A program made the position numbers and the translations under genes. Below, one piece after another: positions 5,551 through 28,810 of a stretch of DNA of 64,000 nucleotides; the first letter of the stretch is position 1, and the number at the start of each line of letters is the position of its first letter. Origin of the DNA: Macrostomum lignano (Eukaryota); NCBI GenBank assembly GCA_002269645.1, contig NIVC01000012.1:372001-436000 (forward strand). The letters run 5' to 3'. The notes under the pieces were generated by a model, which saw nothing but the letters and a program-made list of their open reading frames with translations, ran no database searches and was not told the DNA's origin.

Positions 5551-5558
5551 ATGCTCAC

Positions 5559-6064: not shown

Positions 6065-6135
6065 CTGCGAGAAAAAGAGGGGTGGTCAGCAACCTGAGGG
6101 TTTGTCCCGAATGTCTATCAATCAGTGACTTAAGA

Positions 6136-10047: not shown

Positions 10048-10529
10048 ATCTGAGTCGATGAACCATATGGAGCCACTAACATGCACGAATACTCTTCAAT
10101 ACTCTATATTGAGAGAATATTGAGTACAAAGCTAGGCTAAAGGAACTCAGACTCATTGCACTGACGTTAATTGCCCAAGCACAAGGTGTGAATAATCGTA
10201 CACAATACATGGACAAGGTTTAGTTCAGTTAATAGAGCCATAATGTGGGTGATTCATCCTGAATCTGATCCATTTGCCCCACACAGAAAGGTGTGTTCTC
10301 ACACTAATGCTTGCGCCAGGTACAACCATTCACTCTTTACAAAGGCTTCCCTTCTCAACTCTTTGTTCTCACTCAGTGCCATTCTAAATTCTGCTTGCAT
10401 GCGATAAATTGCACAAACTTTAGTACACCCTAAGTTTGCATGCGACGGGGATTAATGGCTTTCTAACTATTCCAGCCATTCTAAGCTCCCTAGCTGCTAG
10501 ATGGGGTTTTCTAGAACTCAGAGTTTTAT

Positions 10530-11572
10530 GACAGAGAATTCCCAAAAATGAAAATCTATGGGAGAGAATTCCCATGGTCTTACTTAGGAGCTATGGGGAG
10601 AATTCCCGAGAAAAGATGATCTATGGTAGAGAATTCCCCAGGGGAACTGAGAGTCTATGGTAGAGAATTCTCTAGAACTGAGAATCGATGGTAGAGAATT
10701 CTCTAGAACTGAGAATCGATGGTAGAGAATTCTAGGGAACTGAGAATCTATGGTAGAGAATTCTAGGGAACTGAGAATTTATGGTAGAGAATTCTCTAGA
10801 ACTGAGAATCTATGATAGAGAATTCCCCAGGGGAACTGAGAATCTATGGTAGAGAATTCTCTAGAACTGAGAATCTATGATAGAGAATTCCCCAGGGGAA
10901 CTGAGAATCTATGGTAGAGAATTCTCTAGAACTGAGAATCTATGGTAGAGAATTCTAGGGAACTGAGAATCTATGGTAGAGAATTCTAGGGAACTGAGAA
11001 TCTATGGTAGAGAATTCTAGGGAACTGAGAATCTATGGTAGAGAATTCTCTAGAACTGAGAATCTATGGTAGAGAATTCTAGGGAACTGAGAATCTATGG
11101 TAGAGAATTCTAGGGAACTGAGAATCTATGGTAGAGAATTCTAGGGAACTGAGAATCTATGGTAGAGAATTCTAGGGAACTGAGAATCTATGGTAGAGAA
11201 TTCTAGGGAACTGAGAATCTATGGTAGAGAATTCTCTAGAACTGATAATCTATGGTAGAGAATTCTAGGGAACTGAGAATCTATGGTAGAAAATTCTCTA
11301 GAACTGAGAATCTATGGTAGAAAATTCTCTAGAACTGAGAATCTATGATAGAGAATTCCCCAGGGGAACTGAGAATCTATGGTAGAGAATTCTCTAGAAC
11401 TGATAATCTATGGTAGAGAATTCTAGGGAACTGAGAATCTATGGTAGAGAATTCTAGGGAACTGAGAATCTATGGTAGAGAATTCTAGGGAACTGAGAAT
11501 CTATGGTAGAGAATTCTCTAGAACTGAGAATCTATGGTAGAGAATTTTAGGGAACTGAGAATCTATGGTATA
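10530..11572 (+). repeat. Minisatellite, 31-bp unit AGAGAATTCTAGGGAACTGAGAATCTATGGT (about 33 copies)
   Basis: Direct; TCTCTAGAA and CCCCAGGGG variants occur. Confidence 0.95.
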
Positions 11573-11641
11573 AATTAACCGAAAGCCTAAAATCAATAAT
11601 CAACGCTTGGAACACAGTAACCCGAAAACAACACGTCTTAC

Positions 11642-12304
11642 CTTAAGCGTGTACAGTGGCGTCGTGACTTTGGTAGCAGCATCTAGATAATTACTGCTGA
11701 TCGTGGCGTCGAACACGCGACCATGATCGCTCTTGCCAACGTCCAATATAATCAATTCGTGCTTGGTTGTCACGTACACTCGGTCGCTAGTACTTAGCGT
11801 GAAACCGTTTCTCCTCCATCGGGCACTAGGCGCGGGGTAGGCATCAATCTCCGGCGGCACCGGTAGCCGGAGGGTCTCACCGCTAACCAGCTTGATGTTG
11901 CGATTTGTTCGTCCATTTGACAGTCGCGACGCATTCAGGTAGCCGATTAACAAAGTGACGCTGGAGTCTCGAAGTCCGCCCTGGGAGTTGAACGCGTAGC
12001 ATCGGTACCGACCAGCGTCGCTGCGCGTCACTCTGTCGATTCGATAAGTCGACGTGTGATTACCGCGAACCCAAGCGGTGGTTTGAGTGTCCGGATCCAC
12101 CTTCTGCCAGGCGTATGTCGGATCCGGCCGGCCATTGGCCTCGCACACAAAGCCGTGCCGGTCGCCCTCTTTGCGAATGATTGGCACTTTATTTTGCGAG
12201 TGCTGGAATGTTCTCGGCGGGTAAGCGTCGCTTGAGAGCTGCACAGACCAGGTTGGCAAGGTGAGCAGGCTCAGCTGCAGCAACTGCAGCAATAGCGCTA
12301 GCAT
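11642..12304 (-). CDS. sdk: Sidekick-like Ig adhesion molecule, coding exon 1 (signal peptide, Ig1, Cys-less Ig2)
   Basis: ATG at 12304 followed by a hydrophobic leader. Ig1: FVCEANGRPDPTYAWQK..DAGRYRCYAFN. Ig2: EIDAYPAPSARWRRNG..SDRVYVTTKHELIIL, which lacks the canonical Cys as in Sidekick Ig2. Donor AAG|GTAAG at 11642; 663 nt = 221 codons. Confidence 0.85.
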
Positions 12305-12761
12305 AGCCGAAGAGAAACTGCGGCCTGAAGTCCAACTTCCTTGGGTGTTGTATGCCCCTGTGTGTGTAAGACTTAAATTTTGCTATACAACAAGTAAAAC
12401 TGTTAAAAATGGCAACGCACAATGAAGTCAGTCAGTCTGTCAGTTTAGTGTCACTTAAATAAGAGAAGGAAGGTAAGTGCTGGGGTTTATAAAGGGTTGG
12501 GATTACGCGTGCATGCATTGGTGGGGGCGGGGTTGGGGGAAAAGACAGGGAGACAAGAGAACCCGCGCCCTATTGGCTGTGGGAGAGGCAATGTGCGCGC
12601 TAATGTTGAGAATGCCCAAGCCATAATAGGCGGGCCAGGGGTGCCTCTCCCAACCATTACTCCTGTGGGGGTCTCAACCAAGGAGTCTTTACACCAGAAT
12701 CTGGAGTAAGCCTATAAACTGCGTCTTACAAAAGTAAAAAAGCTAGCTATCTAGTTTGTGG

Positions 12762-14296
12762 CCCTATCAAATTGAGATGGCGCCCCCCTATCAAATTGAG
12801 ATGGCGCCCCCCTATCAAATTGAGATGGCGCCCCCCTATCAAATTGAGATGGCGCCCCCCTATCAAATTGAGATGGCGCCCCCCTATCAAATTGAGATGG
12901 CGCCCCCTATCAAATTGAGATGGCTCCCCCTATCAAATTGAGATGGCGCCCCCTATCAAATTGAGATGGCTCCCCCTATCAAATTGAGATGGCGCCCCCC
13001 TATCAAATTGAGATGGCGCCCCCCATCAAATTGAGATGGCGCCCCCTATCAAATTGAGATGGCGCCCCCTATCAAATTGAGATGGCGCCCCCTATCAAAT
13101 TGAGATGGCGCCCCCCTATCAAATTGAGATGGCGCCCCCTATCAAATTGAGATGGCGCCCCCTATCAAATTGAGATGGCGCCCCCATCAAATTGAGATGG
13201 CGCCCCCATCAAATTGAGATGGCGCCCCCCTATCAAATTGAGATGGCGCCCCCCATCAAATTGAGATGGCGCCCCCTATCAAATTGAGATGGCGCCCCTA
13301 TCAAATTGAGATGGCGCCCCCTATCAAATTGAGATGGCGCCCCTATCAAATTGAGATGGCGCCCCCCTATCAAATTGAGATGGCTCCCCCTATCAAATTG
13401 AAATGGCGCCCCCTATCTAATTGAGATGGCGCCCCTATCATATTGAGATGGCGCGCCTATCATATTGAGATGGCGCCCCCCTATCAAATTGAGATGGCGC
13501 CCCCTATCTAATTGAGATGGCGCCCCTATCAAATTGAGATGGCGCCCCCCTATCAAATTGAGATGGCGCCCCCCTATCAAATTGAGATGGCGCCCCCTAT
13601 CAAATTGAGATGGCGCCCCCTATCAAATTGAGATGGCGCCCCCTATCAAATTGAGATGGCGCCCCCTATCAAATTGAGATGGCGCCCCTATCAAATTGAG
13701 ATGGCGCCCCCATCATATTGAGATGGCGCCCCCCATCAAATTGAGATGGCGCCCCCTATCAAATTGAGATGGCGCCCCCATCAAATTGAGATGGCGCCCC
13801 CTATCAAATTGAGATGGCGCCCCCTATCAAATTGAGATGGCGCCCCTATCAAATTGAGATGGCGCCCCCCTATCAAATTGAGATGGCTCCCCCTATCAAA
13901 TTGAAATGGCGCCCCCTATCTAATTGAGATGGCGCCCCTATCATATTGAGATGGCGCGCCTATCATATTGAGATGGCGCCCCCCTATCAAATTGAGATGG
14001 CGCCCCCTATCAAATTGAGATGGCGCCCCTATCAAATTGAGATGGCGCCCCCCTATCAAATTGAGATGGCTCCCCCTATCAAATTGAAATGGCGCCCCCT
14101 ATCTAATTGAGATGGCGCCCCTATCATATTGAGATGGCGCGCCTATCATATTGAGATGGCGCCCCCCTATCAAATTGAGATGGCGCCCCCTATCAAATTG
14201 AGATGGCGCCCCCATCATATTGAGATGGCGCCCCTATCATATTGAGATGGCGCCCCTATCATATTGAGATGGCGCCCCTATCATATTGAGATGGCC
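12762..14296 (+). repeat. Minisatellite, about 23-bp unit CCTATCAAATTGAGATGGCGCCC with variable C-run (about 66 copies)
   Basis: Direct. Confidence 0.96.
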
Positions 14297-16174
14297 AGTT
14301 CAAGTTGCGACTAGAAGTCCACAGACTTCTTGGCTTGTGGTGCCCATGGCTTGGACACCGCTTTTACCTGAATCATAACGCGATTACCCTATGAACTTTG
14401 TGCAAAAATGCTAAATAAATATTCAATCACAATACGCATATCGATCGCAGGAAAACTCCCCAAAAAATGAAAAGAAAATATTGAACAATGATTAGGAATT
14501 CAAAAAAATCCTCCACATTGTTTGATGTGCCAAGATTCCGACTCGTGTTGTGTAAATGTGGAATTCCTTTCCCTTATGCTTAAAGCATTCATTCCATCAT
14601 AATTCCCTGTGCATGGCACTGCAGAGACTATAGGATTAGCGGAGAATAGGAAGGGTGAGGGAGAGCTGGAAGTCCCTGCTCAAGCCACAACGGGGAAGTG
14701 AAGGGCTGAGTCACCCAGCCCACGCTGCTCAACCCCAATTTCGAAGCGCGACTTTCACTTCCTCTGGTTTTACCTTTCCCGTGACCCGTGAACTTTATTA
14801 CTGGGGCTAAGAGCAAGGAAGCCAATAATAATATACCAAATCTAGCTATCATATTAACTTCTACTTCGATCAACTCTAATCTTTGTTTAAATTTGATTTG
14901 ATTTTTAAAGTTTTAATCAACTCTTACACTAGAATTTAAATATTTTTATAGTTTCGTAAAATAAAAATTCCCCTTTTATAACTCGACTACTATTAGGAGT
15001 TTAAGCAGTTTTGAACCTATAAATTTAGTTAAGAAAATAACAAAAATGTATTAATCAAGTAATAAGCAAACAGAAAAACATTTCCGTTGATAAAAAGTTT
15101 GTCTAAACGGCCAACAATTTTAAATATGGAGACTTTATTTTAGTTAAATCAGTCTTTTTTAAATCTGTTCAGCTAAAAAAATACAGTTATAACAAATTTG
15201 AAAAAAACACGGTCTAATATAACTAATTTTAACTGATGTAAAAATGACTTTAAAATTATTTAATATCTCGTTTTGTGAACATTGAAAAATACTTCAGTCC
15301 GTCTTGTCGTATCTATACAAAACATACAAGTTTTAGGTATAAGAGCTGTTTCGACTCCAGGTTTCTAGTTCCAGGTGTCCTTGGCTAGATTCACTATTAC
15401 TAGTCTCGATAACAGAAGCTTAAGACATTTATGCTTTGTCTCCTTAATCGCCCCATTAATCCAGAATTTCTCTGGTCACTTCAGAGCTTTCACTCCAACG
15501 CCGGCTTATAAAAATGCAATGCATTATTTTTACAAACTGTATTAATAAATCTATACGGTATGACATGAAGTCTGTGGCAACGGGTATTTTGGCTAACATT
15601 CTTCACGAAAATGGATTTTTAGAAACTGGAGAAACGAATCTTTATTAAAGTGGCTTAGATCGGGTGTGTGAACATTCACGCTTAAAAATTACCAAACGTC
15701 TCAGCAAATCAAGTTCGACATCATGAAATAACATTCATTTTTGACACGATCGCGCAAAAAAGCAAATTTCGCACACTCCAATCAGCTACTAGCAGTAGGC
15801 GATAATTATATTATCAGAATTTGTTTTATCTTGCTGAATTTTTAAGGGAAGTTAAGAATAACTTACTAAGAAAACTTTGCTCTGCTGAGCAAAGGCCTCT
15901 ATACAGCTATACAGCCTCCCTCTGCAGTCACTGCCATCTCATTCAGCTTTACCCATTCGGCATAGTTTTTAAACCTCTCTCTAACAAATGTAACGACATA
16001 AACCCACAATTGAATAATTATTGCCACGGTCTCCAGCATTTATTAAGGTCACACTGCCTCAGCTCCAGCTAAGCACAACCCCATCGCAGTGCGTTTCAGT
16101 TCACAGAGCTGAAGGTCAGACAGGCGGAGTTCGCAGCGTCCAACGAAAGCCAACGCGGCAGTGGGCGACTCGCG

Positions 16175-18556
16175 TCAGGTGCAGCTGAAGCTCAGCTGCG
16201 TTCTCTTCAGGCAAACAACAACAACAACAACAGAGTACGCTGCCAGTTCACAAAAGCAGCGTCAGATGGCGCGCTTCAAAGCTTGGGCGCGAACAAAAGC
16301 CGCACCGCCGGCAGAGTCCGGGGCGCCGGCGTCAGCCAGCAGACAGTCGACGTAGCGCCGAGTATTCGCCTGTCCCCGCCGGTAGGGTGCCTGCAACGTA
16401 AGTAGCAGCACCTCCTGCACCGGCTCCGGACAGTAGGCCTCGGCGCGGATGACGTGGCCTGCCAGCTGGAGTCGCCGACGGCGCAGCAGATCGCTAGGAC
16501 GGGCCAGGCCGGCGCGATGATAGAGCGCCGTGTTGGTGACTCGCTCGTTGCCGATCTTGAAGGCGGCGCGCAGCAGGCCAGCGTGCGCCGCGTCGACTTG
16601 AGCCTCGAGCGAGTCTGTCAGCGTCCAGGTCTCGGCGTTGTATAACAGGACGGTCTCGATCACCGCCTGGAACAGCGCCGCCCTCTGGCGGTCCGGTAGG
16701 GCCTCGGACTGCAGGACTGACCTTATAGAACGAAAGGCAGCCCAAGCAAGTCCTCGGCGACGCCGCAGATCCTCGCGGACGTCGGGAACCAGACCGCCGA
16801 GGTAGACGAACTGCTGACATCTTGGAAGCTCACTCGCCTGTCCGTCAGCGCCTCGGCAGAAGATTGCAGCCTCGGTGTCGTCCGGCACGCATAGCACGAC
16901 GGTCTTCTGCGTGTTGACCACCAGGCCGACGCTCGCCGCAACGGCAACCAGCCTATCCAGCTGTCGTTGGGCGCCCTCGACGGTCGAGGACAGCAGGGCG
17001 AGGTCATCGGCGTAGCCAAGCACGCTGAGCCGTCTCTCCGGTTGGCGTCGACCCACGCGTCGCCGCAGCAGGAAGCCGTCGTCGTTGGAAGGCAGAGCAG
17101 TCCGTAGCAATCCGTAGGCAAACATCAGTGTGAGATTTATCTTCTGCTGAGCAGTCTAGAGTAGTCTTGGCAAAGGTGACTTGTGCTACTGTCATTACCA
17201 TAGTCAGTGCTGGCGATCACACCGTTTGGGTTGAATAGGTGGCACATTCGGAACCACCAACCAATATGCTCTGCTAATGATTTCGAGCACGGCCGAAGGA
17301 AAACGTCATTGTCCCTATCGTGAGTGCTGAACGGCTGTAAGTTGTGATGCCATCGTATTGCACTATTGAGGTCGCCACCCGGTTCCTGACCACTGAGCAC
17401 CAGCCTGTAGTTCTCGTCCGCTACGCGCACCTGAAAGCCAGTGAAAGTCTGACGCATCAATGAGCCGTCAAATCGAGCTCCCTCAAAGGTGAACTTGCAG
17501 TTCCGGTCCTTGGTCATGTTTGACAGCCGCTCCAGACCTGCGAGATCGGTGAATTAGGACTTGCCCATCACTGTGGCGGCCGCTCAGCTCCTGTGGCCAG
17601 GACCGGTTTAAAGCGATGGTTGGCGGAGCAATGGTTGACATGTCGGAAACGAGCGTTCGGGTGGAATTATTCCGATCATGCTCGCGGCTTCCAACTGCTT
17701 GGGCTTGACAAGTAGTGCGAGTCGCTCTTGAACATCCAATTCTATTCCCTTTCGCTACTCTCCCACCCTCTTCCCGCTCTCCCTTCTTCATTCTCCTTCT
17801 GGGGTCTGTGAGCAGCACTGATTCGCTGTCACTGGATGTCCTGAGCTGACTGACTGAGTCTGCCTCCCTAATCGGTCTGTCTCTGCCTCCTGTCCTCACC
17901 AGTACCTGCTCCGTATATTACACAGGGCTCTTGAATTGCGTTGGATAATCACTCAGATGGGCTCTAAGTCACCCAGCCTCAGGCCGCTCACCCATCCAGT
18001 AGTTGCCGCTGGGATCTCCGAATCCCCTCACGTAGGTGTCCCAGTTCTGTGCGAACGAGAGGCTGTTATCCAGGTGTCGCTGGAAGACCACCTCAGAGCC
18101 GACCTCAGGACTGGGAACAGGGCTGGTTAGCGATCGGACACTGCTGAACTCTTTCTGAGAGCCGTCTTGCAAGCCATAGGGCGCGAATCGCACAGCCTTC
18201 CGGATGTAGGATGGGTCCGCAGAGATTCCTCTCCTGATATTCAAGCACCTGCGCCAGGTGTTGCACAGAAACACCAGCTGACCGGCAGTTCCATCGCTGG
18301 ACACTCGGCCCATGAGGAAGGCACCGAAGTTTTTTCTCAATATTCCACTTTCAGGAACCACTTTCAGTCCCGTGACACGTCGTTCGGCCACTCCAGTGAT
18401 ATTGAGGTCCAGTGAGAGCTCGAACTTATCATAGAATGGGTTGTATCTCAGGGTCGCAGGCTGCCTCACGAAGTCCACCGAAACCTCAGAGGCCGAGGTC
18501 CTCTGTGCGACGGACAGCCAGAGAACAAGGAGAAGCAGCGCAGAGCGGAGTTGCAT
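16175..18556 (-). pseudogene. Fibrinogen-related (FReD) gene, left copy; disrupted
   Basis: Exon 1 is 18556-17992 (ATG G|GTGAG); exon 2 starts at 17537 (GCAG|GT CTG GAG). The 88 nt between ..NGVIA and VCL give a +1 frameshift (premature stop at 17137). An RTE insertion at 16218-17115 splits the ancestral tail VCL|KRTQLSFSCT* (TGA at 16177-16175). Confidence 0.8.
16218..17115 (-). mobile_element. 5'-truncated RTE-type non-LTR retrotransposon (C-terminal RT/thumb)
   Basis: The ORF contains LGYADDLALL, LVVNTQKTVV and FVYLGG. 3' tail is (TTG)n. The 9-bp TSD AGGCAAACA lies at 16209-16217 and 17116-17124. Confidence 0.88.
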
Positions 18557-18635
18557 GGCTGGCTACTAAAGATTTTCTGCTTGGAAGCGCTTTGGACCTT
18601 GGAGACTGGATTCAGAGTGGCGAAGAGCGCTGCTG

Positions 18636-18645
18636 CTTATAAATA
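18636..18645 (-). promoter_or_regulatory. Candidate TATA box (TATTTATAAG) of the left FReD copy
   Basis: About 80 nt upstream of the ATG and conserved in both arms. Confidence 0.5.
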
Positions 18646-18948
18646 CTCGACAGCTCTGTGCTGCTAGTGGGCCACTGCATTTAAACAAATAGCTTTGATT
18701 TCGATATTCCGACAGCTTTTTACCACGTCATTTGATCAATAAATTTATGCATATCTCACAATTCGCAATAGTTTTTATTTATGTTTTGAATAGAAAATTT
18801 GTCTAAGAAAGTACCAGATTTTTCTGCTAATTGCTCGAGTTTTGTTACAAGTAGCTGTTATGTAGCGAAAATGTTGTGAGAAAGGCAAATTTGTGCTTCT
18901 TAGCAGACAAATTTTCGTTTCGATAAATAGCTCGTAATAATAATGATT

Positions 18949-20118
18949 AGTGGTGAGTAGCGTGGCTACTCTGGGTTAGCTAATGCGTCGGGGAGGGGCC
19001 CAAGCGTCGGAGGATCTCGAACCCCACCGGGCGGCATCTGAGAATCCGGAAGACCTTGGTGAGTTACTCAACGCTTTTAACAATAAGGCCACTCAGGACC
19101 AAAGCTCGAAGCCCCAAATAGACAGAGTTAGGCAACAGAGGCAGGTGATGCTGGTAGCGGACTTCCTAGGGGACGCATCCCGTTCGGCCGATGTCGTCCT
19201 GATCCAGGACGCGGAGGGCTAACTGGTGCTCCGTGGAGCCAAAAGCAGCAACATGAAACCAGAGGCGCTGTCCGTCGGGCAGTGGATCATGGCAAACGCC
19301 CAGATCCTTGAGTGTCTCCTCAAATCAGGACAACTCATAGAGCAAACAGTCTCGGAATACATGCAATATACAACGTGCAAGTCGGCGAGCTCCTCGACTG
19401 CGGCTATGATACATCTCGGGTGATGCGGGTGATGCAGTGGCACGTCGACGTAGCCCGGCTCCGCATCGGGATGTCCAAAACCAATCAGCTGGGGCAACAG
19501 GACCAGAATATCCAGCTGCCAAGACTGGCCAGAGGACATCCGCTTTCGCTTTTTAGGCAATTTTCATATTGGTCCCGTTTAGGCACACTCTAAACATCTG
19601 TCGATCAACGGCATCTGCCCGATCAAGACACCCGGCTGGCCACTGTTCAGCTTCCGTTGTAGTCCAAGTTTAACTTTCTGCTTATCTGACTGCTTTCTTC
19701 TCGCCTCCTCTCTCTTTGTCTGGTGTTTGGCCTGTTCCGCCCCTGGTTCGTCCCCTCGCCCGTGTCGCGCTTTCGCTTTCCTTCCTCGGCGTCGTTCGCT
19801 AAGTGGTGAGTAGCGTAGCTACTCTGGGTTGGCGAACGCGTCGCGGGGGGTGGTGGGTGCTTGAGCCTCCCGACCCCGACTCTTGGGAGGCTTTAGGCCG
19901 CGCGGGGCTGCTCTGGCCCGGCTACCCTGCCTCGCCTTTGCAAGCTCAAAATTTTCTTTTTTCATTTATTTTTCCCTTTTAAAGCCACAGTTGTTTTAAA
20001 ATCGCTTTCGTACTGAGCTCATTAAAATACATTCGACCTATCACAGGGGCCTGTTCCGCCCTGGTTCGTCCCCGCCCGTGTCGTGCCTACGTCTTCCTTC
20101 CTCGGCGTCGTTCGCTAA
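18949..20118 (+). mobile_element. Internally deleted Ngaro/PAT-type tyrosine-recombinase (DIRS order) retroelement with split direct repeats
   Basis: Repeat order A1 (18949-18998, AGTGGTGAGTAGCGT..CTACTCTGGGTT), degenerate ORF, B1 (19729-19802), A2 (19802-19850), B2 (20048-20118). The internal reading LSVGQWIMANAQILECLL..EYMQYT/VQVGELL resembles the gag-like ORF1 of DIRS-order elements (from recall); it has one in-frame stop and one frameshift. Confidence 0.65.
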
Positions 20119-20126
20119 TTGATTTC

Positions 20127-20255
20127 ACCTGCACTAATGGGCAGATGTGAAACCGACAGCTCAGCCGCAGCTATTGAGCGACGAATCTGAATTCTGAAGG
20201 CTGTTCAATCCCTGGACTGGGGGGGGGGTCGCCACACACCGTCAATTACACCAGA
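20127..20255 (-). mobile_element. SINE fragment (3' part), same family as 24553, 38710 and 43937
   Basis: Reverse complement contains GTAATTGACGGTGTGTGGCGACCCCC..CAGTCC..AATAGCTGCGGCTGAGCTGTCGG. Confidence 0.85.
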
Positions 20256-20589
20256 TTCTAAATTTAGCAGGGCTAGAGAGCACCCCATAGCAACGCCATC
20301 AAGTAGGCGATAAGTATTGGTTTTCGCAAAAAGGTCGCAAAACTAACATTTTAAAGCATTTTCAGGGATAGTCAGAGGATTGTGTTGGTAGACAAGGTCA
20401 GTGGCGGATCAAACGGGTTGTTATTGAACACAGAGAAGCCAAATAGTAGTAGCTAAACAACAATTATTTGTCACTTAATTAGATTAAGTATCAAGTTAGC
20501 ATAATCAAATTAGCATTAGCATAATCAGATTAGCTTGATTTGATTTTAAGGAAAACTTTGAACAGATCTTTTAGATTTAAGAACCGGTT

Positions 20590-20760
20590 GCGACATATCT
20601 TGACGTCAGGAAAATAGCCAAGACATTGAAATTTGGTCTTGTCATAAAGAATGGCATTCAATTTGTTAACGTAGGCATCAGTGTCTAAGATAGCCACACC
20701 ATATCCTTTATCATAACCCATTATCCTGATCTTCTCATTCTTCCTCAGCTTCTGTTTCAA
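20590..20760 (-). mobile_element. Penelope-like element remnant (pre-RT region)
   Basis: LRKNEKIRIMGYDKGYGVAILDTDAYVNKLNAILYDKTKF resembles the I(x)xADKGxxVV+DxxxY motif upstream of PLE RT. Confidence 0.55.
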
Positions 20761-21590
20761 TGTTGGTGGCTGGTGGCTGGCGTGCTCCTATGCTGCGACT
20801 ACATGTATGAAGAGAAAGAAAGTTGCAGCTGCAGGATAAAATATTTCGCCTCTTCCAAAGATTACAAGCTTCGATCCACTTTGATGTCGATGATCTAGAA
20901 GACTATTGAGACTGAAGTCGTAGTCACTGACTGCAGAAGTAGAAGTCGTAACAATGGCAACGAATACAAAAGTTGCCGAGTTCGACGTGGCCAAAGTGCG
21001 TATCAATGAAAAGCCTATGAAGAGAGAATGGAGCAATATCTTGTTAATACACTCGTCATAAATTTGGCACAAAAGCAAGCGAACCAGACCACAGTGATTG
21101 GAAATGACATTTATCAGTTGCTACGCAGAGGAAACTGTGCCCCGAAGCCGAAAATTGTTAAGCGAGTAGCAAAAACGAAATACGAGTATAAACTAAAAGC
21201 CATGAAAAAATGTAAAATCCGTGCGATCGCACTGAAATTGGCTTCATTTTAAGCCGGTTTGAGCGAGCCTTTTGGCCTCTGAAATTGCAATATCTTCGTC
21301 ACTCGGTAACAAACTGAAATTCGAAAAGAGAAATTCTGCTTAGGAGATAAATTTGATAATTTTCAATACGTTTTTGACTACATAGCAGCTACTTGTAACA
21401 AAACTCAAGCAATTAGCAGAAATATTTTCTTGAGTCAATTTTTTCAAGTCAAAAAAGTATAGTGAATTGTGAAAATATGCAGAATTTTATTGATCAAATG
21501 GTGTGTCAGAAAGCTGTCGGAATATTGAAATCACAGGCGAAATCACGCTGTTTGAATGCAGCGGCCCACTAGCAGCACAGAGATGGCGAG

Positions 21591-21600
21591 TATTTATAAG
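21591..21600 (+). promoter_or_regulatory. Candidate TATA box (TATTTATAAG) of the right FReD copy
   Basis: About 80 nt upstream of the ATG at 21680. Confidence 0.5.
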
Positions 21601-21679
21601 CAGCAGCGCTCTTCGCCACTCCGAATCCGATCTCCAAGGACCGAAGCGCTTCCAAGCAGAAAATCTTCAGTAGCCAGCC

Positions 21680-23086
21680 ATGCAACTCCGCTCTGCGCTG
21701 CTTCTCCTTGTTCTCTGGCTGTCCGTCGCACAGAGGACCTCGGCCTCTGAGGTTTCGGTGGACTTCGTGAGGCAGCCTGCGACGCTGATATACAACCCAT
21801 TCTATGATAAGTTCGAGCTCTCACTGGACCTCAATATCACTGGAGTGGCCGAACGACGTGTCACGGGACTGAAAGTGGTTCCTGAAAGTGGAATATTGAG
21901 AAAAAACTTCGGTGCCTTCCTCATGGGCCGAGTGTCCAGCGATGGAACTGCCGGTCAGCTGGTGTTTCTGTGCAACACCTGGCGCAGGTGCTTGAATATC
22001 AGGAGAGGAATCTCTGCGGACCCATCCTACATCCGGAAGGCTGTGCGATTCGCGCCCTATGGCTTGCAAGACGGCTCTCAGAAAGAGTTCAGCAGTGTCC
22101 GATCGCTAACCAGCCCTGTTCCCAGTCCTGAGGTCGGCTCTGAGGTGGTCTTCCAGCGACACCTGGATAACAGCCTCTCGTTCGCACAGAACTGGGACAC
22201 CTACGTGAGGGGATTCGGAGATCCCAGCGGCAACTACTGGATGGGTGAGCGGCCTGAGGCTGGGTGACTTAGAGCCCATCTGAGTGATTATCCAACGCAA
22301 TTCAAGAGCCCTGTGTAATATACGGAGCAGGTACTGGTGAGGACAGGAGGCAGAGACAGACCGATTAGGGAGGCAGACTCAGTCAGTCAGCTCAGGACAT
22401 CCAGTGACAGCCAATCAGTGCTGCTCACAGACCCCAGAAGGGGAGTGGGGAAGGAGAGCGGGCAGAAGGGCGAAGGAGAAAAGAATTTGATGTTTACAGT
22501 ACAGATCACGCCAAGGAATAATTCCACCTGACCGTTCGGTTTTGACCTTACGTGTGGCGGGGAACAAAGCAAGCAGCTGTCCAAAACCATCGCTTTAAAG
22601 CAGTGCCGGCCGCCACAGTTGATAGGCAATTCTTAACTCACCGATCTCGCAGGTCTGGAGCAGCTGTCAGCCATGACGAAGGACCGGAACTGCAAGTTCA
22701 CCTTTGAGGGAGCTCGATTTGACGGCTCACTGATGCGTCAGACTTTCACTGGCTTTCAGGTGCGCGGAGAAGACACGAACTACACACTGATGCTCGGGGG
22801 TGAGGATCCGGGTGGCGACCTCTATAATGACACACGACGGTTTCACAACCTTCAGCAGTTCAGCACTTACGATAGGGACAATGACGGCCTTCATGGGTCC
22901 TGCTCAGTAACACAAACAAAGAAAACCGGTTGGTGGTTCCGGTACTGTCACTTCTTTAACCCAAATGGTGTGATTGCTGAAATCCAAGTGGATGAAATAT
23001 TTTGCCTTGGATACTGCGTAGCAACAGACGTATTCGGCGCTTATATTTGCCTGACGAGAACGCAGCTGACCTTCAGCTGCACCTGA
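21680..23086 (+). CDS. Secreted fibrinogen-related domain protein (FREP/ficolin-like), join(21680..22244,22653..23086), 332 aa
   Basis: Signal peptide MQLRSALLLLVLWLSVAQ. FReD motifs: VFQRHLDNSLSF..WDTYVRGFG..GNYWMG|LEQLSAMT, FSTYDRDND, GWWFRYC..FNPNG. Phase-1 GT-AG intron; 565+434=999 nt with a stop. Confidence 0.9.
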
Positions 23087-24552
23087 CACGGGTCGCCCAA
23101 CTGCCGCGTTGGCTTTCGTTGGACGCTGCGAACTCCGCCTGTCTGACCTTCAGCTGATTGACTCTGTGAACTGAAATGCACTGCGATGGGGTTTTGCTGA
23201 GCTGGAGCTGAGGCATCGTGACTTCAATAAATAAATTCTGGAGACAGTTGCAATCATTATTCAACTGTGGGTTTATGTCACTGTAGTTATTAGAACTGCC
23301 GGGAAATATGCCGAATGGGTGAAACTGAATGAGATGTCAGTGGAAGTAGAGGTAGGCTGTAGGTGGCCAGCCTTTTAGAGTTGCTAAAAGTTCTCTTGCG
23401 TGTAACGCAAGCTGCGCACGTGTAGACTAATGAGAGCCTTAGGGCCAAAGCTGAATATTAAAAGTACATTAATTCGCTGCACAGGCTGCCTGATGTGGCG
23501 CAGAAATTTCACTTCTGACTAATTGAATTGACAGATTGATGTCAGTTTCACCTGTTAGTCCACTGCTGCCGTTGCTTGCTAATTCAGCTCGTCATAAGAT
23601 CTTTCAAAGCGAGACAGAAATAAGCAATTAAAAAAGAAACATCATATTTGACTTTATCACTGATTCTCTTCAGTGCTGTCGGAGCTTTTAACGGGGCTTT
23701 TAAGATTATGGAAAGTTTTTCGCTTTTTAATGAGGAAAAATGTTTTCACGAATCCTATTTTTAAGATTTTATGAGACTATATTCCTATATAGTAAAAATT
23801 CAAATTTGACGAAGTTATTTTATATCAACACAAGTTTACTCGACGCGAAACGAATCAGGGCAAACTTTTTTAATCAATCTACTGTTATTTAAGCGTGCAC
23901 GGGTTATTTCTATTTTAAAGTTCTCTCTGGAACTTTTATACCTGGGGTGCTTCCTGCTTCCTGCTACAGGAAACATGTGGTCGCCAAAGTTCTACTGAAT
24001 TTCGGTCATCATGCTGCCCACCCTGACTGATTTAGACAGTCTCAGTCGAGTCGCAATCTTCGTCCACTGCTACGGCCCAGAGACTAAGTAGCAGAGCCGT
24101 CAAGAGGAGAACCATCAGTGACGAGTGACGAGGATGTGCCGGTGAAAGTTGGCCGCGAGCAAAGCAGTTGTGACAGTTGTGACCACATTACTGTTAAGAA
24201 TGTAGCTATTTCAAAAAAATAATAGAAAACTGACTTGCAAAAAAATTGTAAAGTGAGTTTGCTTAATAATGTCTGCTTAATATATTTTCCAGTTGTTTTT
24301 TGGTGGGCGTAGTCGCGAAGTGATGCATGATTGGTCAGGACTTGTTAAACAATAATTAAGCTTAGGCAAGAGAGAGTGAGTCATGTACAACAATGTGGAG
24401 CAGAGAGAGTAGTAAGCTATTGATCGGGAGAAGCTTTTTACAATCGTTAAATTATGAGACGGCTTGTGCATTTGGAATGCACTCAGCAACAGCTCTCAGG
24501 CATGCTTGATGGGGTTCATATATGGGAGAGACGACCTGTTTAAATAAGCCTA

Positions 24553-24792
24553 GAGGTTGTAGCCCATAGCGGTTAGAGCATTGGACTCACTACTGGAAGG
24601 TCGGGGGTTCGATTCTCGACCCAACTAGAAACAATTTGTGTCCTTGAGCAAAACACCTTTAATCCAGCTGTAAAATGGGTGCCGGAATCAGCTGAGGTAA
24701 TTGAGGGTGTGTGTGTGGCGACCCCCCAGTCCTGCGGCTGAGCTGTCGGTTGCACATCTGGCCCATTAGGGCAGGTGTAAGCTATGATTATG
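24553..24792 (+). mobile_element. tRNA-derived SINE
   Basis: A box TAGCCCATAGCGG and B box GGTTCGATTC, followed by the shared body GTGTCCTTGAGCAA..CTGTAAAATGGGTGCC. Four copies occur in the window. Confidence 0.85.
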
Positions 24793-25179
24793 CATGGCAC
24801 GCAAAACTTTTCGGCTGTGTGATAGCGTGAGTGAGGGGACCGGGCTGTCGCTGTTGCTGAGTATTTCTTAGAAACGGAAATTTAAATAGTGACGCGTAAC
24901 ACGCATCAAACACAGCAAAACAAATTTTAAATTACATTAGGCAAACAATCTGCGTCTGGAAAAAGACAACCAGGCAAACAGCAAAGACCATTAGAGCCTG
25001 GTGAGAATAAAAAATGAAGAAATATCATGAAAACATGAAGAAATATGAAGATAGATAGAAATATCTCAGCAATATCTATCTGAAGAAATATATTTCTAAA
25101 CTAAACAGTTTAGAAAATAATGCATCGGATATATAAGAGAAGTTGTGATGTTGCTTTTAAAATGTAAATATTTGGTTTG

Positions 25180-25880
25180 CTAATATGGCGCTTTTTTGGT
25201 TGCTGATGGCGCTTTTTGGTTGCTAATGACGCTTTTTTGGTTGCTAATGAAGCTTTTTGGTTGCTAATGGCGCTAATTTGGTTGCTATTGACGATAATTT
25301 GGTTGCTAATGGCACTAGTGTGGTTTCTAATGGCGCTTTTTTGGTTGCTAATGGCGCTAGTGTGGTTTCTAATGGCGCTTATTTGGTTGCTAATGGCGCT
25401 AATTTGGTTGCTAATGGCGCCAATTTGTTTTGAATGGCGCGAATTCGGTTGCTAATGATCCTATTTTGGTTGCTAAGGCCGCTAATTTGGTTGCTAATGG
25501 CGATAGTGTGGTTTCTAATAGCGCTTATTTGGTTGCTGATGACGCTAATTTAGTTGCTAATGGCGCTAGTGTGGTTTCTAATGGCGCTTATTTGGTTGCT
25601 AATGGCGCCACTTTGTTTCGAATGGCGCGAATTCGGTTGCTGATGATCCTATTTTGGTTGCTAAGGCCGCTAATTTGGTTGCTAATGGTGCTTATTTGGT
25701 TGCTAATGGCGCTAATGTCGTTGCTAATGATGCTAATGTGGTTGCTAAGGGAACGAATTTGGTTGTTATGCGCGTCAGTCTTGTTCATAAACGGTTGCTA
25801 GGTGCTATTACGTCGGTATCGAGGAAGTCTTATCACTGCGTAATAAAATATTTTTTGTTGCTAGACCATGGCGCGTCAGT
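25180..25880 (+). repeat. Degenerate 21-bp minisatellite TTGGTTGCTAATGGCGCTAAT
   Basis: Direct. Confidence 0.92.
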
Positions 25881-26278
25881 CATGTGGTTGCTGAGAAGAT
25901 AAGAAAATTCGATAAAAATGGATAATATTGGCTACAATATACAGTTTTTGCATGGCAAAATGCGCGAAAACCACGCAAGCTAAAAGCAAAAACAAAAATA
26001 TCAAATTAAAAGAGTTATTGTTTACTTTATTGAAAAAAATTAGAATGTAAATAAGAGATAACATATTTAAGTCTGCTAGAATTAAATACAAGTGTTCTGC
26101 ACATTTCTCTCTCTCTCTACCTCTCTCCCTCTCTATCTACCTCTCTACCTACCTCTCTCCCTCTCTACCTCCCTCTACCTACCTCTCTACATCTCTACCT
26201 ACCTCTACCTCTGCCTCTACCTGTGTCCCTCTCTATCTACCTCTCTCCCTGTTACCCATCCAAATTAGCCAGAGCTGG

Positions 26279-26541
26279 TCAATAGTCACTACAATCGCTA
26301 TCTTCATCTCCACCGGCAGGGCTATCGTCAGAGCTGGCCCCACGATCGGAGTCGCTCTTCAACTCCGTGTTGGCCCTCGCTGCTTTTGCCTCCGCAGAAT
26401 CCGGATGAAACCAGGGAGCCTGCTTCGATTCACCAACGAAGGGAAACGATGCCTCTTTCGATTTCAAAATGCATCCGCGACTATCCAGACGTTTCAGCAG
26501 ACGGTTCCACATTTCGTTCACTCGCAGTAGGTGACTGTTTC
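26279..26541 (-). CDS. HELZ2: HELZ2-like helicase, terminal exon
   Basis: Acceptor AACGCAG|GA (phase 1). Completes LFIIG|NSHLLRVNEMWNRLL, the SF1 C-terminus; stop at 26279. Confidence 0.8.
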
Positions 26542-26689
26542 CTGCGTTAATTAATTGAAAAAAATTCTCATATAGGCTACTTGTAGTAGACGTTGAGGAT
26601 ATGAAAGAAACTTTTAAATTTCTTTTCCGATTTTTAGCGACGCAGAGAGAGAAGCAAAAATCCGCGCCACTTTTTTCAGCCTTTGAGGC

Positions 26690-27245
26690 GCCACTCTTGC
26701 AGCCTATGGGGCGCCACTCGTTCAGCCTATGAGGCGCCACTTTCCAAGCTTATGGGGCGCCACTCTTTCAGCCTATGGGGTCCACTTTCCAAGCTTATGG
26801 GGCGCCACTCTTTCAGCCTATGGGGCGCCACTTTTCAAGCTTATGGGGCGCCACTCTTTCAGCCTATGGGGCGCCACTTTCCAAGCTTATGGGGCGCCAC
26901 TCTTTCAGCCTATGGGGCGCCACTTTCCAAGCTTATGGGGCGCCACTCTTTCAGCCTATGGGGCGCCACTTTTCAAGCTTATGGGGCGCCAGTCTTGCAG
27001 CCTATGGGGCGCCACTTTCCAAGCTTATGGGGCGCCACTCTTTCAGCCTATGGGGCGCCACTTTCCAAGCTTATGGGGCGCCACTCTTTCAGCCTATGGG
27101 GCGCCACTTTCCAAGCTTATGGGGCGCCACTCTTTCAGCCTATGGGGCGCCACTTTTCAAGCTTATGGGGCGCCACTCTTTCAGCCTATGGGGCGCCACT
27201 TTCCAAGCTTATGGGGCGCCACTTTTCAAGCTTATGGGCGCCACA
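26690..27245 (+). repeat. 46-bp dimeric minisatellite GGGGCGCCACTCTTTCAGCCTAT + GGGGCGCCACTTTCCAAGCTTAT
   Basis: Direct; two alternating 23-bp subunits. Confidence 0.95.
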
Positions 27246-27310
27246 TACGGGTAGCTGGCTCCGACCTAGGACTATACCGGTAAATGCATAAGACAAAACT
27301 CAATATTATT

Positions 27311-27348
27311 TGCGACGCGTTTCGGCTAAAACTAGCCATCTTCAGGCA
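27311..27348 (-). ncRNA. Minimal type I hammerhead ribozyme motif
   Basis: UGC-CUGAAGA-U-GGCUA/GUUU/UAGCC-GAAA-CGCG-UC^GCA: core, stem II, palindromic stem III and 3-bp stem I. Confidence 0.75.
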
Positions 27349-27492
27349 CTATCGAACAGAATTTATTTCAACCTATTAAATACTGTGTAGACGACAAAAT
27401 CAGGTATTGAAAAGATATATATATATATATATTATATTGGAAAAAATTATCTACACAGTATTTAATAGGTTGAAATAAATTCTGTTCGATAG

Positions 27493-27530
27493 TGCCTGAA
27501 GATGGCTAGTTTTAGCCGAAACGCGTCGCA
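27493..27530 (+). ncRNA. Minimal type I hammerhead ribozyme motif (inverted partner)
   Basis: TGCCTGAAGATGGCTAGTTTTAGCCGAAACGCGTCGCA. Confidence 0.75.
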
Positions 27531-27999
27531 AATAATATTGAGTTTTGTCTTACTATTATCTGTTAAGAGTGCTTCTCTACCGCAAATGCATAAGACCTGC
27601 AGGCGTCCAGGGTAGCTAAAACTGTAAGTGGAATTTAAAACCTCACGAGAAACGGAGAGAAATCGTTACGTTCGCAAATTGAAACTTCACCTTCTGTAGT
27701 TATTGAAGCATAAAAAAATTGCTAGACGCTTTTTTTTGTCTTCGAGCTATGAATTTCAATTTAAGCTACTCAATAAGTTCCAATTCCAATGGTGTGTTGA
27801 AAGGCAGTGCTGCTCAAGTATTCTACTTGTTTTACGTCAATAAGCTACTTATTGTTGAGCGATTGGGGAGAAAATTCCCTACGACTGCTAACCTTTGAAT
27901 GACATTTTCCAGTGTACTTAGATAAAGCTAAGTCTCCGTAACTCAAACTCACACGCATATATTCAGCAATCTTAGTTACCTATTAACACCTTTTTGATT

Positions 28000-28810
28000 T
28001 GAGTGTGTGGCGCTATTTCATTCGAGGTTGTGGCGCCATTTCATTTGAGGTTGTGGTGCCAATTCAGTTGAGGTTTTGGCACCATTTCATTTGAGGTTGT
28101 GGCGCCAATTCAGTTGAGGTTGTGGCGCTATTTTATTTAAAGTTGTGGCGCTAATTCAGTTGAGGTTGTGGCGCTATTTTATTTGAAGTTGTGGCGCTAA
28201 TTCAGTTGAGGTTGTGGCGTCATTTCAATGGAGGGTGTGGCGCCATTAAAGTTGAGTTATTGGCGCCATTTCAGTTGAGGTTGGGGCGCCATTTCAACTA
28301 GAGGTGTGGCGCCATTTAAGTGAGTTAGCACCATGAGGTTGGCGCCATTTAATAGAGTGTGTGGCGCCATTTAATGAGTGTGTGGCAATTTAATTTGAGT
28401 GTGTGGCGCCATTTAATTTGAGTGTGTGGCGCCATTTAATTTGAGTGTGTGGCGCCATTTAATTTGAGTGTGTGGCGCCATTTAATTTGAGTGTGTAGCG
28501 CCATTTAATTTGAGTGTGTGGCGCCATTTAATTTGAGTGTGTGGCGCCATTTAATTGAGTGTGTGGCGCCTTTTCATTTAAGTGTGTGGCGCCTCTTTAT
28601 TTGACGTTGTGGCGCCAATTCATTCAAGGTTGTGGCGCCATTTCAATGGAGTGTGTGGCGCCATTTCATTTGAGGTTGTGCCGCCAATTCATTCAAGTTT
28701 GTGGTGCCATTTCAGTAGAGGTTGTGGCGCCATTTCAATTCGGCTTGTGGCGCCATTTTAATTGAGTTTGTGGCGCCATTTCATTTGAGATTGTGACGCC
28801 ATTTTCTGAG
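28000..28810 (+). repeat. Degenerate 21-bp minisatellite GTGTGGCGCCATTTAATTTGA
   Basis: Direct; the centre is homogeneous and the flanks are degenerate. Confidence 0.92.

What the first reader, a model, noticed from the sequence alone, without database searches (positions are those of the whole stretch)
15885..23370. Head-to-head palindromic pair of fibrinogen-related genes with mosaic identity: constant 5' exon, divergent C-terminal FReD region
Seen: two inverted arms, each carrying a two-exon secreted FReD gene, with identity in sharp blocks. Exon 1 (565 bp) differs at only about 2 positions (one R/I change), and the first ~195 bp of the intron are nearly identical. The 3' half of the intron diverges. 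An ~87-nt block at the start of exon 2 is again almost identical (1 change). The rest of the FReD diverges strongly (VADENYRLVLSGQEPGGDLNSAIRWHH vs GEDTNYTLMLGGEDPGGDLYNDTRRFH; VFLRPCSKSLAEHIGWW vs GLHGSCSVTQTKKTGWW). Promoter-distal and 3' flanks are moderately diverged. Established: the C-terminal P-subdomain of FReDs is the ligand-binding surface in ficolins and tachylectins, and invertebrate FREPs are diversified immune recognition proteins. Inference: arm-to-arm gene conversion homogenises the N-terminal part while the binding surface escapes it or is under diversifying selection. This would be a compact constant/variable receptor-diversification module.
Basis: partly seen in the sequence, partly recalled or inferred. 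Interest (0 to 1): 0.8.

Follow-up and report, generated by a model that had tools for sequence, protein, structure and literature searches.

The report
Inverted fibrinogen-domain gene pair, partly homogenised
Two old, head-to-head copies of a flatworm (Macrostomum lignano) secreted fibrinogen-domain gene recently had their first exon and nearby intron made identical by gene conversion; the rest stays diverged, and the left copy is broken at its 3' end by a frameshift and a retrotransposon, so this is an ordinary case of duplicate-gene evolution, not a receptor-diversifying device.

Summary
Arms 15910-18925 (-) and 21320-23361 (+) each carry a two-exon FReD gene, and identity falls into blocks. 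Block A (5'UTR end, exon 1, first 197 nt of intron) has 3 differences in 773 nt, including a perfect 622-nt run. The start of exon 2 is 96% identical, mid exon 2 is 74%, distal exon 2 and the distal intron are barely alignable, and the last codons plus 3'UTR are 96%. Silent and intronic sites are homogenised too, so block A is a recent arm-to-arm gene-conversion tract, not purifying selection.

A ~7-nt insertion shifts the frame and gives a premature TAA. A 900-bp 5'-truncated non-LTR retroelement with target-site duplication sits 12 codons before the ancestral stop.

The variable part does map to the FReD ligand-binding subdomain. However, omega there is about 0.6 overall and about 0.96 at non-scaffold positions, which is indistinguishable from neutral. 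An unlinked paralogue pair shows the same pattern. Five paralogous loci hold single genes with no inverted partner.

Verdict: partial gene conversion between old inverted paralogues, one recently crippled. This is a new example of a known kind, of modest interest.

The parts
21320..23361 (+). Right arm of the inverted duplication; carries the intact gene
   Evidence: homology to the left arm over this span
15910..18925 (-). Left arm of the inverted duplication; includes a 900-bp retroelement insertion
18926..21319 (.). Non-palindromic spacer (~2.4 kb) between the divergent promoters. It is made of repeat fragments and has no Pfam-recognisable ORF.
21680..22244 (+). Right gene exon 1 (565 nt): signal-peptide-like start, a family-specific N-terminal region and the first part of the FReD
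22245..22652 (+). Right gene intron (GT..AG, phase 1). The position is conserved in four M. lignano paralogues.
22653..23086 (+). Right gene exon 2, ending at TGA 23084-23086. The full product is 332 aa and ends with the family's C-terminal motif CLTRTQLTFSCT.
17992..18556 (-). Left gene exon 1 (565 nt, 2 differences from the right copy)
17538..17991 (-). Left gene intron
17137..17537 (-). Left gene exon 2 as it now reads, ending at a premature TAA (17137-17139)
17154..17160 (-). ~7-nt insertion (TCTAGAC on the gene strand) between the TAC and TGC codons. It shifts the frame; the exact placement depends on the alignment.
   Evidence: the upstream frame hits a stop, and the other frame reads the ancestral ..DCSAEDKSHTDVCLKRTQLSFSCT*
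16216..17115 (-). 5'-truncated non-LTR retroelement on the same strand as the gene. It has an open RT C-terminal ORF, a (TTG)6 tail, and a target-site duplication AGGCAAA at 16209-16215 and 17116-17122.
16175..16208 (-). Stranded last codons (KRTQLSFSCT) and ancestral stop TGA (16175-16177) of the left gene, now beyond the retroelement
21669..22441 (+). Block A, right copy: recent gene-conversion tract with 3 differences in 773 nt and a perfect run at 21790-22411
17795..18567 (-). Block A, left copy (perfect run 17825-18446)
22640..22766 (+). Block B, right copy: the last 13 intron nt plus the first 38 codons of exon 2, 96% identical to left 17424-17550
22767..23045 (+). Diverged region, right copy: mid exon 2 is 74% identical and distal exon 2 is barely alignable. 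It matches left 17123-17423. It encodes the B/P-subdomain loops, including the Ca-site-to-GWW loop.
23046..23153 (+). Block C, right copy: the last 13 codons, the stop and proximal 3'UTR, 96% identical to left ~16110-16215. It is also 91-92% identical to paralogue L001.
21591..21599 (+). TATA-like TATTTATAA ~80 nt upstream of the right ATG (mirror copy at 18638-18646 on the minus strand)
   Evidence: read directly from the sequence; function inferred
23226..23231 (+). AATAAA poly(A) signal of the right gene (left counterpart at 16039-16044, minus strand)
   Evidence: read directly from the sequence; function inferred

Best explanation
This is an old inverted (head-to-head) duplication of a Macrostomum-specific secreted FReD gene. 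The two arms have diverged by roughly 15-30% at silent and non-coding sites. Very recently, one non-allelic arm-to-arm gene-conversion event copied at least 743-773 bp from one arm to the other (end of the 5'UTR, all of exon 1, first ~170-200 nt of the intron). Older or shorter exchanges, together with sequence constraint, keep the start of exon 2 and the 3' end similar.

The tract stops where homology has decayed: at a purine-rich low-complexity stretch in the intron. The middle and distal parts of exon 2 encode weakly constrained surface loops of the FReD, including the ligand-pocket loop. They evolve at about the neutral rate in the whole family and are now too different to be converted. 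I infer that heteroduplex rejection sets up a self-reinforcing barrier there.

The right copy is intact and presumably makes a secreted lectin-like protein. The left copy was functional for most of its history but has recently lost its conserved Cys-rich C-terminus through a frameshifting insertion and a young retrotransposon. It is therefore a fresh pseudogene, or at best a truncated product.

Shown: the mosaic, the homogenised silent sites, the lesions, and omega values. Inferred: the mechanism of tract termination, loss of function of the left copy, and lectin function.
For: - Conversion: exon 1 has 1 of 137 synonymous sites changed, against 16 of 44 in mid exon 2 (Fisher p = 2e-10). The proximal intron has 1 of 197 sites changed, against 38 of 262 in the 3'UTR and flank (p = 6e-9). 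The perfect run is 622 nt, against a maximum of 98 in shuffles. At 4-fold sites the counts are 1/100 against 3/17.
- The arms are old: upstream 24%, distal intron 29% plus many gaps, 3' flank 15-18% mismatches; a retroelement in one arm only; a 2.4-kb unique spacer.
- Tract end: differences resume at 22412-22452, in a GA-rich stretch.
- Left-copy lesions.
- The left copy was long functional: its ORF is open up to the frameshift, FReD scaffold residues are kept, and derived changes are symmetric (R 9 aa / 23 nt, L 11 aa / 30 nt).
- Neutral-like variable sites: omega 0.96 at variable columns and 0.33 at scaffold columns. The unlinked pair P0001/P0002 gives 0.92 and 0.21.
- The right copy is full length against its paralogues, with all C-terminal cysteines present.
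- Species: a neighbouring AAA ORF is 100% identical to an M. lignano UniProt entry.
Against: - There is only one assembly and no reads, so the identical block cannot be verified independently.
- Pairwise omega averages over time and has little power with ~70 codons, so episodic positive selection on a few pocket residues is not excluded.
- Block B (dS 0.08) and block C could reflect older conversion, constraint or both. Block C is also 91-92% identical to the unlinked paralogue L001, which argues for constraint there.
- The direction of conversion and the order of the two lesions are unknown.
- Expression of either copy is untested.
Confidence: 0.75

Rival explanations
1. The palindrome is a selected constant/variable receptor module: conversion keeps a common N-terminal part, while diversifying selection keeps two different ligand-binding surfaces.
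For: - The diverged region includes the loop between the Ca-site and GWW that lines the ligand pocket in ficolins.
- Both copies keep the FReD scaffold residues, and both have accumulated derived changes.
- Each copy has gained private N-glycosylation sequons: right NYT and NDT, left NMT (read from the alignment).
- Omega at variable columns is ~1, well above the scaffold value.
Against: - Omega is not above 1.
- The same exon 1 / exon 2 rate contrast exists in a non-palindromic pair.
- The left copy has a frameshift and carries a retroelement in its coding end.
- Five paralogous loci are single genes without an inverted partner.
Confidence: 0.12
2. The near-identical block is an assembly or polishing artefact: consensus from mis-assigned reads of one paralogue overwrote the other in a repeat-rich neopolyploid genome.
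For: - The 622 nt of perfect identity lie inside otherwise diverged arms.
- The window is unusually rich in tandem arrays.
- M. lignano is a neopolyploid that is hard to assemble (PMC10733133 abstract).
- The public paralogue L001 shows frame breaks that could be assembly indels.
Against: - If exon 1 truly differed by ~10-15%, as in other paralogue pairs, reads would map uniquely and would not be collapsed.
- The block is flanked by graded identity (92% in the 5'UTR) and contains two clustered real differences.
- The block's edge falls in low-complexity intron sequence, as expected of a recombination tract.
- The palindrome itself cannot be a chimeric-read artefact, because the arms differ by 15-30%, by a TE and by a spacer.
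Confidence: 0.07
3. The duplication is recent, and extreme local mutation or hypermutation of exon 2 and the flanks followed it.
For: Block A is 99.6% identical, as a young duplicate would be.
Against: Non-coding flanks, promoter-distal sequence and the distal intron are as diverged as exon 2 or more so, with many indels and a private TE. This would need hypermutation everywhere except one 773-bp block.
Confidence: 0.03
4. Strong purifying selection alone keeps exon 1 identical.
For: Exon 1 is the more constrained part in the family (omega 0.22-0.39).
Against: Synonymous sites (1/137) and 197 nt of intron (1 difference) are also identical. Other paralogue pairs show dS of 0.27-0.79 in exon 1.
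Confidence: 0.01

Closest known systems
Partial gene conversion between duplicated genes with a tract ending in intronic simple sequence (classic case: human G-gamma/A-gamma globin genes; cited from my own knowledge, not looked up here)
   Same: The 5' part of the gene and part of an intron are homogenised to near identity, the 3' part stays diverged, and the tract boundary falls in low-complexity intron sequence.
   Different: The copies here are inverted and head-to-head rather than tandem. One partner is disabled. The organism is a flatworm.
Sex-chromosome palindromes maintained by arm-to-arm gene conversion (e.g. PMC8600007, PMC8327919, PMC8981503; titles and abstracts)
   Same: Inverted arms separated by a unique spacer, with intrachromosomal arm-to-arm conversion.
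   Different: Those arms are over 10 kb and over 99% identical along their whole length. Here the arms are ~2-3 kb, and only 773 bp is above 99%; the rest is 45-85% identical.
Biomphalaria glabrata FREPs (IgSF + FReD), reported to diversify by gene conversion and point mutation (PMC7588048, text found)
   Same: A secreted invertebrate FReD protein family, with gene conversion among copies.
   Different: In the snail the diversified part is the N-terminal IgSF region and the process is reported as somatic. Here no IgSF domain is found, the N-terminal part is the homogenised one, and nothing indicates somatic change.
Ficolins, tachylectin-5 and angiopoietin-like FReD lectins
   Same: Sequence match to the FReD B/P subdomains (ficolin-2 E 3.5e-22; Pfam PF00147). 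The Ca-site DRDND, the Cys pair and GWW are conserved.
   Different: It lacks the first ~42 profile positions (A subdomain) and has no collagen or coiled-coil stalk. Instead it carries a ~130-aa N-terminal region with no Pfam or PDB match, and a Cys-rich C-terminal tail that diverges beyond the NPNG motif. Full-length matches are seen in only a handful of database representatives.

Membership tests
Fibrinogen-related domain (Pfam PF00147 Fibrinogen_C) | Significant match to the family profile above the curated cut-off | tested here: met
   106.6 and 103.3 bits against a cut-off of 22; ficolin-2 at E 3.5e-22; all Foldseek hits are FReDs, although the model is poor (pLDDT 59).
Fibrinogen-related domain (Pfam PF00147 Fibrinogen_C) | Complete domain including the N-terminal A subdomain | tested here: not met
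   the match covers profile positions 43-186/191 of 221 only. The upstream 150 aa have no Pfam or PDB hit.
Fibrinogen-related domain (Pfam PF00147 Fibrinogen_C) | Ca-binding DxDxD motif and the disulfide-bounded loop before GWW | tested here: met
   the alignment to ficolin-2 pairs DRDNDGLHGSC..GWWFRYC with DQDNDLNTGNC..AWWYKNC. Both window copies keep these residues.
Non-allelic (ectopic) gene-conversion tract | A run of identity far longer than expected from the pair's overall divergence | tested here: met
   622 nt against a shuffle maximum of 98; bound 6e-34.
Non-allelic (ectopic) gene-conversion tract | Homogenisation extends to silent and intronic sites, so it is not explained by selection on the protein | tested here: met
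   1/137 synonymous sites, 1/197 intronic sites, 1/100 four-fold sites.
Non-allelic (ectopic) gene-conversion tract | Tree topology differs between the tract and its flanks when an outgroup paralogue is added | tested here: inconclusive
   the right and left copies are each other's closest relative in every segment against L001. Only the depth changes, not the topology.
Large palindromes kept by arm-to-arm conversion (sex-chromosome type) | Arms over ~8-10 kb with over 99% identity along their whole length | tested here: not met
   the arms are ~2-3 kb, and identity above 99% is confined to 773 bp.
Molluscan-type FREP (IgSF + FReD) | One or two IgSF domains upstream of the FReD | tested here: not met
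   Fibrinogen_C is the only Pfam match; no PDB relative for the N-terminal region.
Molluscan-type FREP (IgSF + FReD) | Somatic diversification of the gene within individuals | not testable with these tools
   This needs multiple clones or reads from single animals.
Receptor under diversifying selection | dN/dS significantly above 1 in the recognition region | tested here: not met
   omega is 0.64 for mid exon 2 and 0.96 at variable columns; the LRT against omega = 1 gives p = 0.9. Power is low because the test is pairwise on 64-70 codons.
Unprocessed pseudogene (left copy) | A reading-frame lesion relative to intact relatives | tested here: met
   a frameshift leads to a premature TAA at 17137-17139. 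A retroelement sits at 16216-17115, inside the last 12 codons.
Unprocessed pseudogene (left copy) | No functional product (no transcript or protein, or an unstable one) | not testable with these tools
   No expression data could be reached. The exact proteins are absent from the 15-billion-sequence collection.

The most novel reading that the evidence does not exclude
The broken left copy is kept as a donor or acceptor cassette. Repeated short conversions between the arms, germline or even somatic, would shuffle pocket-loop sequence into the expressed right gene. That would give a flatworm a miniature pseudogene-templated diversification system for an FReD lectin, analogous to chicken Ig V pseudogenes or to what is claimed for snail FREP3.
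Probability: 0.05. Interest if true: 0.75.

Novelty: new member of a known kind. Interest (0 to 1): 0.28.

Why it matters
This is a clean, small example of how partial gene conversion and local loss of homology carve a duplicated gene into 'constant' and 'variable' blocks without any dedicated mechanism. It is a useful caution against reading such mosaics as receptor-diversification modules.

It also flags an unannotated, lineage-specific FReD subfamily in the regeneration model M. lignano. The subfamily has a novel N-terminal region, an A-subdomain-less FReD and a Cys-rich tail, and its pocket loops evolve almost neutrally.

If population data showed recurrent exchange of the pocket loops, or positive selection on them, the locus would become relevant to invertebrate immune or reproductive protein diversification. 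On present evidence it is not.

Tried and rejected
- A third exon downstream of NPNGVI was considered. I rejected it because the right copy reads straight through to the family's C-terminal motif ..C..TxLxFSC(S/T)*.
- Import of exon 2 from another paralogue was tested against L001. The right and left copies are closest to each other in every segment, so there is no support, though only a few paralogues were available.
- The raised NG86 dS in mid exon 2 of all pairs looked like family-wide 5' homogenisation. Clean four-fold sites are uniform in the unlinked pair P0001/P0002 (15/82 against 3/22), so most of that signal is a multiple-hit artefact at codons with high dN.
- The AlphaFold2 model was too poor (pLDDT 59) to map variable residues in 3D. 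I used the sequence alignment to ficolin-2 instead.
- Exact look-ups of both proteins and their exon ORFs found nothing, so there is no independent contig or transcript.
- The Rfam scan of 15000-24500 found nothing.
- Pfam on the spacer ORFs found nothing.
- GC3 is slightly higher in exon 1 and block B than in mid/distal exon 2 in most family members. This is too weak to claim GC-biased conversion.
- A literature search for Macrostomum plus fibrinogen gave no relevant paper.

Full report
**What is there**

The window is from Macrostomum lignano. A neighbouring AAA-ATPase ORF (41894-43090) is 100% identical over its full length to UniProt A0A1I8GQ47 of that species. The only close relatives of the two genes are M. 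lignano proteins. Between 15910 and 23361 lie two inverted arms around a ~2.4-kb unique spacer.

Each arm carries a two-exon gene transcribed away from the spacer:
- Right gene (+): exon 1 21680-22244, a phase-1 GT..AG intron 22245-22652, and exon 2 22653-23086. The product is 332 aa.
- Left gene (-): exon 1 18556-17992, with exon 2 starting at 17537.

Both products match Pfam Fibrinogen_C (E 2e-30 and 2e-29), but only over profile positions 43-186/191 of 221. The first ~150 residues are a signal-peptide-like start followed by a region with no Pfam or PDB relative. The same two-exon structure, with the intron at the same codon, is found in four annotated M. lignano paralogues. The right protein aligns end to end with the full-length paralogues, including the conserved C-terminal cysteines and the terminal motif C..TxLxFSC(S/T). 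No other FReD gene lies in the window.

**Check of the observation**

A global alignment of the arms, with the left-arm insertion excised, gives a clear mosaic:

| Segment (right-arm coordinates) | Right vs left arm |
|---|---|
| Promoter-distal sequence | ~76% identical, with indels |
| 5'UTR/promoter 21549-21668 | 92% identical |
| Block A 21669-22441 | 3 differences in 773 nt; perfect run 21790-22411 (622 nt) |
| Distal intron | 52 mismatches in 180 ungapped columns, plus many gaps |
| Block B 22640-22766 | 5 differences in 127 nt; 22679-22766 has 1 in 88 |
| Mid exon 2 22767-22975 | 54 differences in 209 nt (74% identical) |
| Distal exon 2 22976-23045 | essentially unalignable |
| Block C 23046-23153 | 4 differences in 107 nt |
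| 3' flank | 82% identical |

Exon 1 differs at 21784 (synonymous) and 21789 (Ile/Arg). The longest identical run (622 nt) compares with a mean of 44.5 and a maximum of 98 in 2000 shuffles of the same mismatches.

**Why block A is gene conversion**

The identity is not confined to amino-acid-determining positions:
- Synonymous sites: 1 of 137 differ in exon 1, against 16 of 44 in mid exon 2 (p = 2e-10).
- Non-coding sites: 1 of 197 proximal intron positions differ, against 38 of 262 in the 3'UTR and flank (p = 6e-9).
- Four-fold sites: 1/100 against 3/17.

Other paralogue pairs show exon 1 dS of 0.27-0.79, so constraint alone cannot explain it. The rest of each arm is old. Non-coding divergence is 15-30% with many indels, one arm has a private retroelement, and a repeat-filled spacer separates them. 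The arms are therefore long-diverged copies in which one 743-773-bp tract was recently overwritten.

Differences resume at 22412-22452 in a purine-rich low-complexity stretch of the intron. On the 5' side they resume in the 5'UTR. Block B is significantly more similar than its neighbour (p = 5e-8 for all sites, p = 0.01 for synonymous sites). It is probably an older or separate exchange, helped by constraint. Block C is also 91-92% identical to the unlinked paralogue L001, so constraint on the C-terminal codons and proximal 3'UTR explains much of its identity.

Positions 16216-17115 are a 900-bp insertion on the gene's strand. It carries an open reverse-transcriptase C-terminal ORF (Pfam RVT_1, below the curated cut-off) and ends in (TTG)6. 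It is flanked by a 7-bp direct duplication, AGGCAAA, at 16209-16215 and 17116-17122. This is a 5'-truncated non-LTR retroelement with a target-site duplication, and its uninterrupted ORF suggests that it is young. It sits 12 codons before the ancestral stop.

After excising it in silico, one frame reads ..DCSAEDKSHTDVCLKRTQLSFSCT*, the family's normal C-terminus. The frame coming from NPNGVIA is a different one and runs into TAA at 17137-17139. Against the right copy, the shift is explained by a ~7-nt insertion (TCTAGAC) between the TAC and TGC codons at about 17154-17160. Either lesion alone removes the conserved terminal motif. Together they delete the last 23 residues, including three conserved cysteines.

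Upstream of the lesions the left ORF is open and keeps every FReD scaffold residue. Polarising the right/left differences with four paralogues gives symmetric counts: right-derived 9 aa / 23 nt, left-derived 11 aa / 30 nt. The left copy therefore evolved as a functional gene for most of the divergence time and was disabled recently.

**Is the variable part under diversifying selection?**

Alignment to ficolin-2 places the most variable patch (GLHGSCSVTQTKKTG in the right copy, VFLRPCSKSLAEHIG in the left) between the Ca-site DxDxD and the GWW motif, inside the conserved disulfide loop.

The rate data give no evidence of positive selection:
- Pairwise ML (GY94) gives omega 0.64 for mid exon 2, not different from 1.
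- A two-class model, with classes defined from the other paralogues, gives omega 0.33 at scaffold columns and 0.96 at variable columns (LRT against 1, p = 0.9).
- The pair P0001/P0002, on different contigs, shows the same picture: exon 1 omega 0.22, mid exon 2 omega 0.59, scaffold 0.21, variable 0.92. Its four-fold-site divergence is uniform.

The fast exon 2 is thus a property of the family, consistent with weak constraint on loop residues, and owes nothing to the palindrome. None of five paralogous loci (L001-L005) has a second FReD copy or an inverted self-match within the ±10 kb fetched.

**Most likely mechanism**

1. An ancestral inverted duplication produced two divergently transcribed genes.
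2. Loop-encoding parts of exon 2 and non-coding sequence drifted apart.
3. Once divergence there exceeded what homologous recombination tolerates, exchange became restricted to the still-similar 5' part, which was converted again very recently. Block A's divergence of ~0.4% compares with roughly 15-30% at silent and non-coding sites outside the blocks.
4. One copy then suffered a frameshift and a retrotransposon hit.

Steps 1, 2 and 4 are read from the sequence. The homology-barrier argument in step 3 is an inference from general knowledge of recombination.

**Rivals**

- The selected constant/variable module is weakened by the broken partner, by omega not exceeding 1, and by the same pattern occurring off-palindrome.
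- A polishing artefact cannot be excluded without reads. It is unlikely given the graded flanks and the two internal differences, and because copies as diverged as other pairs would not cross-map.
- A recent duplication followed by hypermutation, and pure purifying selection, are both contradicted by the flank and silent-site data.

**Comparison with known systems**

This works like classical partial gene conversion between duplicated genes, and like arm-to-arm conversion in palindromes. It does not meet the definition of the large, uniformly >99% identical sex-chromosome palindromes. It is not a molluscan-type FREP, because it has no IgSF domain. In the snail it is the N-terminal IgSF part that is reported to diversify, somatically. 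It is a genuine but atypical FReD protein, of a small Macrostomum-restricted architecture.

**Verdict**

It is a new example of a known evolutionary process. Interest is modest.

Noticed in passing
window 447-14295, 25170-30144, 47889-53312, 56809-63997: The window is packed with long minisatellite and microsatellite arrays: 44 TRF rows, with units of 4-57 nt and arrays up to 1.6 kb. Several units share a GGCGCC core (12762-14295, 25170-25765, 26664-27244, 27993-28804). These arrays also create many spurious long ORFs.
   Followed up: partly
window 16216-17115: A 5'-truncated non-LTR retroelement with an uninterrupted RT C-terminal ORF, a very short 3'UTR and a (TTG)n tail rather than poly(A). 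There is no second copy in the window and only a 72% match in L003. Its clade was not determined.
   Followed up: partly
window 54030-55551 (+): A piggyBac-type transposase (Pfam DDE_Tnp_1_7, E 3e-47) split over two overlapping ORFs, so it is frameshifted.
   Followed up: no
window 41894-43785 (-): Exons of an AAA-ATPase (CDC48-like) gene. The 398-aa ORF is 100% identical to M. lignano UniProt A0A1I8GQ47, which identifies the species.
   Followed up: yes
window 31800-32477 and 36797-37981 (-): ORFs with AAA_11 helicase and HELZ2 OB-fold matches, probably exons of one HELZ2-like helicase gene.
   Followed up: no
window 11600-12304 (-) and 57928-58560 (-): An immunoglobulin I-set domain ORF and a GFO_IDH_MocA oxidoreductase N-terminal ORF. 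They are probably exons of neighbouring genes.
   Followed up: no
L001 9810-9977 and ~10985-10995 (GCA_002269645.1 NIVC01001022.1): The closest public paralogue (P0003, Mlig009561g2) has a frame break in exon 1 and a 1-nt deletion that turns ..CHYLNPN.. into ..CIT*. Downstream, the normal C-terminus CLKRTQLSFSCT* is still readable out of frame. It is either another pseudogene or carries long-read indel errors. The annotated proteins P0003 and P0007 are truncated or mis-modelled as a result.
   Followed up: partly
window 23066-23079 and 23142-23155; left arm ~16110-16200: The motif CTGACCTTCAGCTG, which encodes the terminal LTFSC, recurs 76 nt downstream in the 3'UTR of the right gene. The proximal 3'UTR is 88-96% conserved among the right copy, the left copy and L001, but not in more distant paralogues. 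It may be a subfamily-specific 3'UTR element or a small internal duplication.
   Followed up: partly
window 20116-20254 (spacer); also 44095-44216, 38988-39049, 24732-24777; L001 12576-12718: A short dispersed repeat in the spacer recurs elsewhere in the window and next to the paralogue in L001. The spacer also holds internal direct repeats (18949-18998 / 19802-19850 and 19729-19802 / 20048-20118), suggesting nested TE remnants.
   Followed up: partly
right protein residues 231-233 and 247-249; left protein residues 195-197: Each copy has private N-glycosylation sequons in the FReD: right NYT and NDT, left NMT. They were created by lineage-specific substitutions.
   Followed up: no
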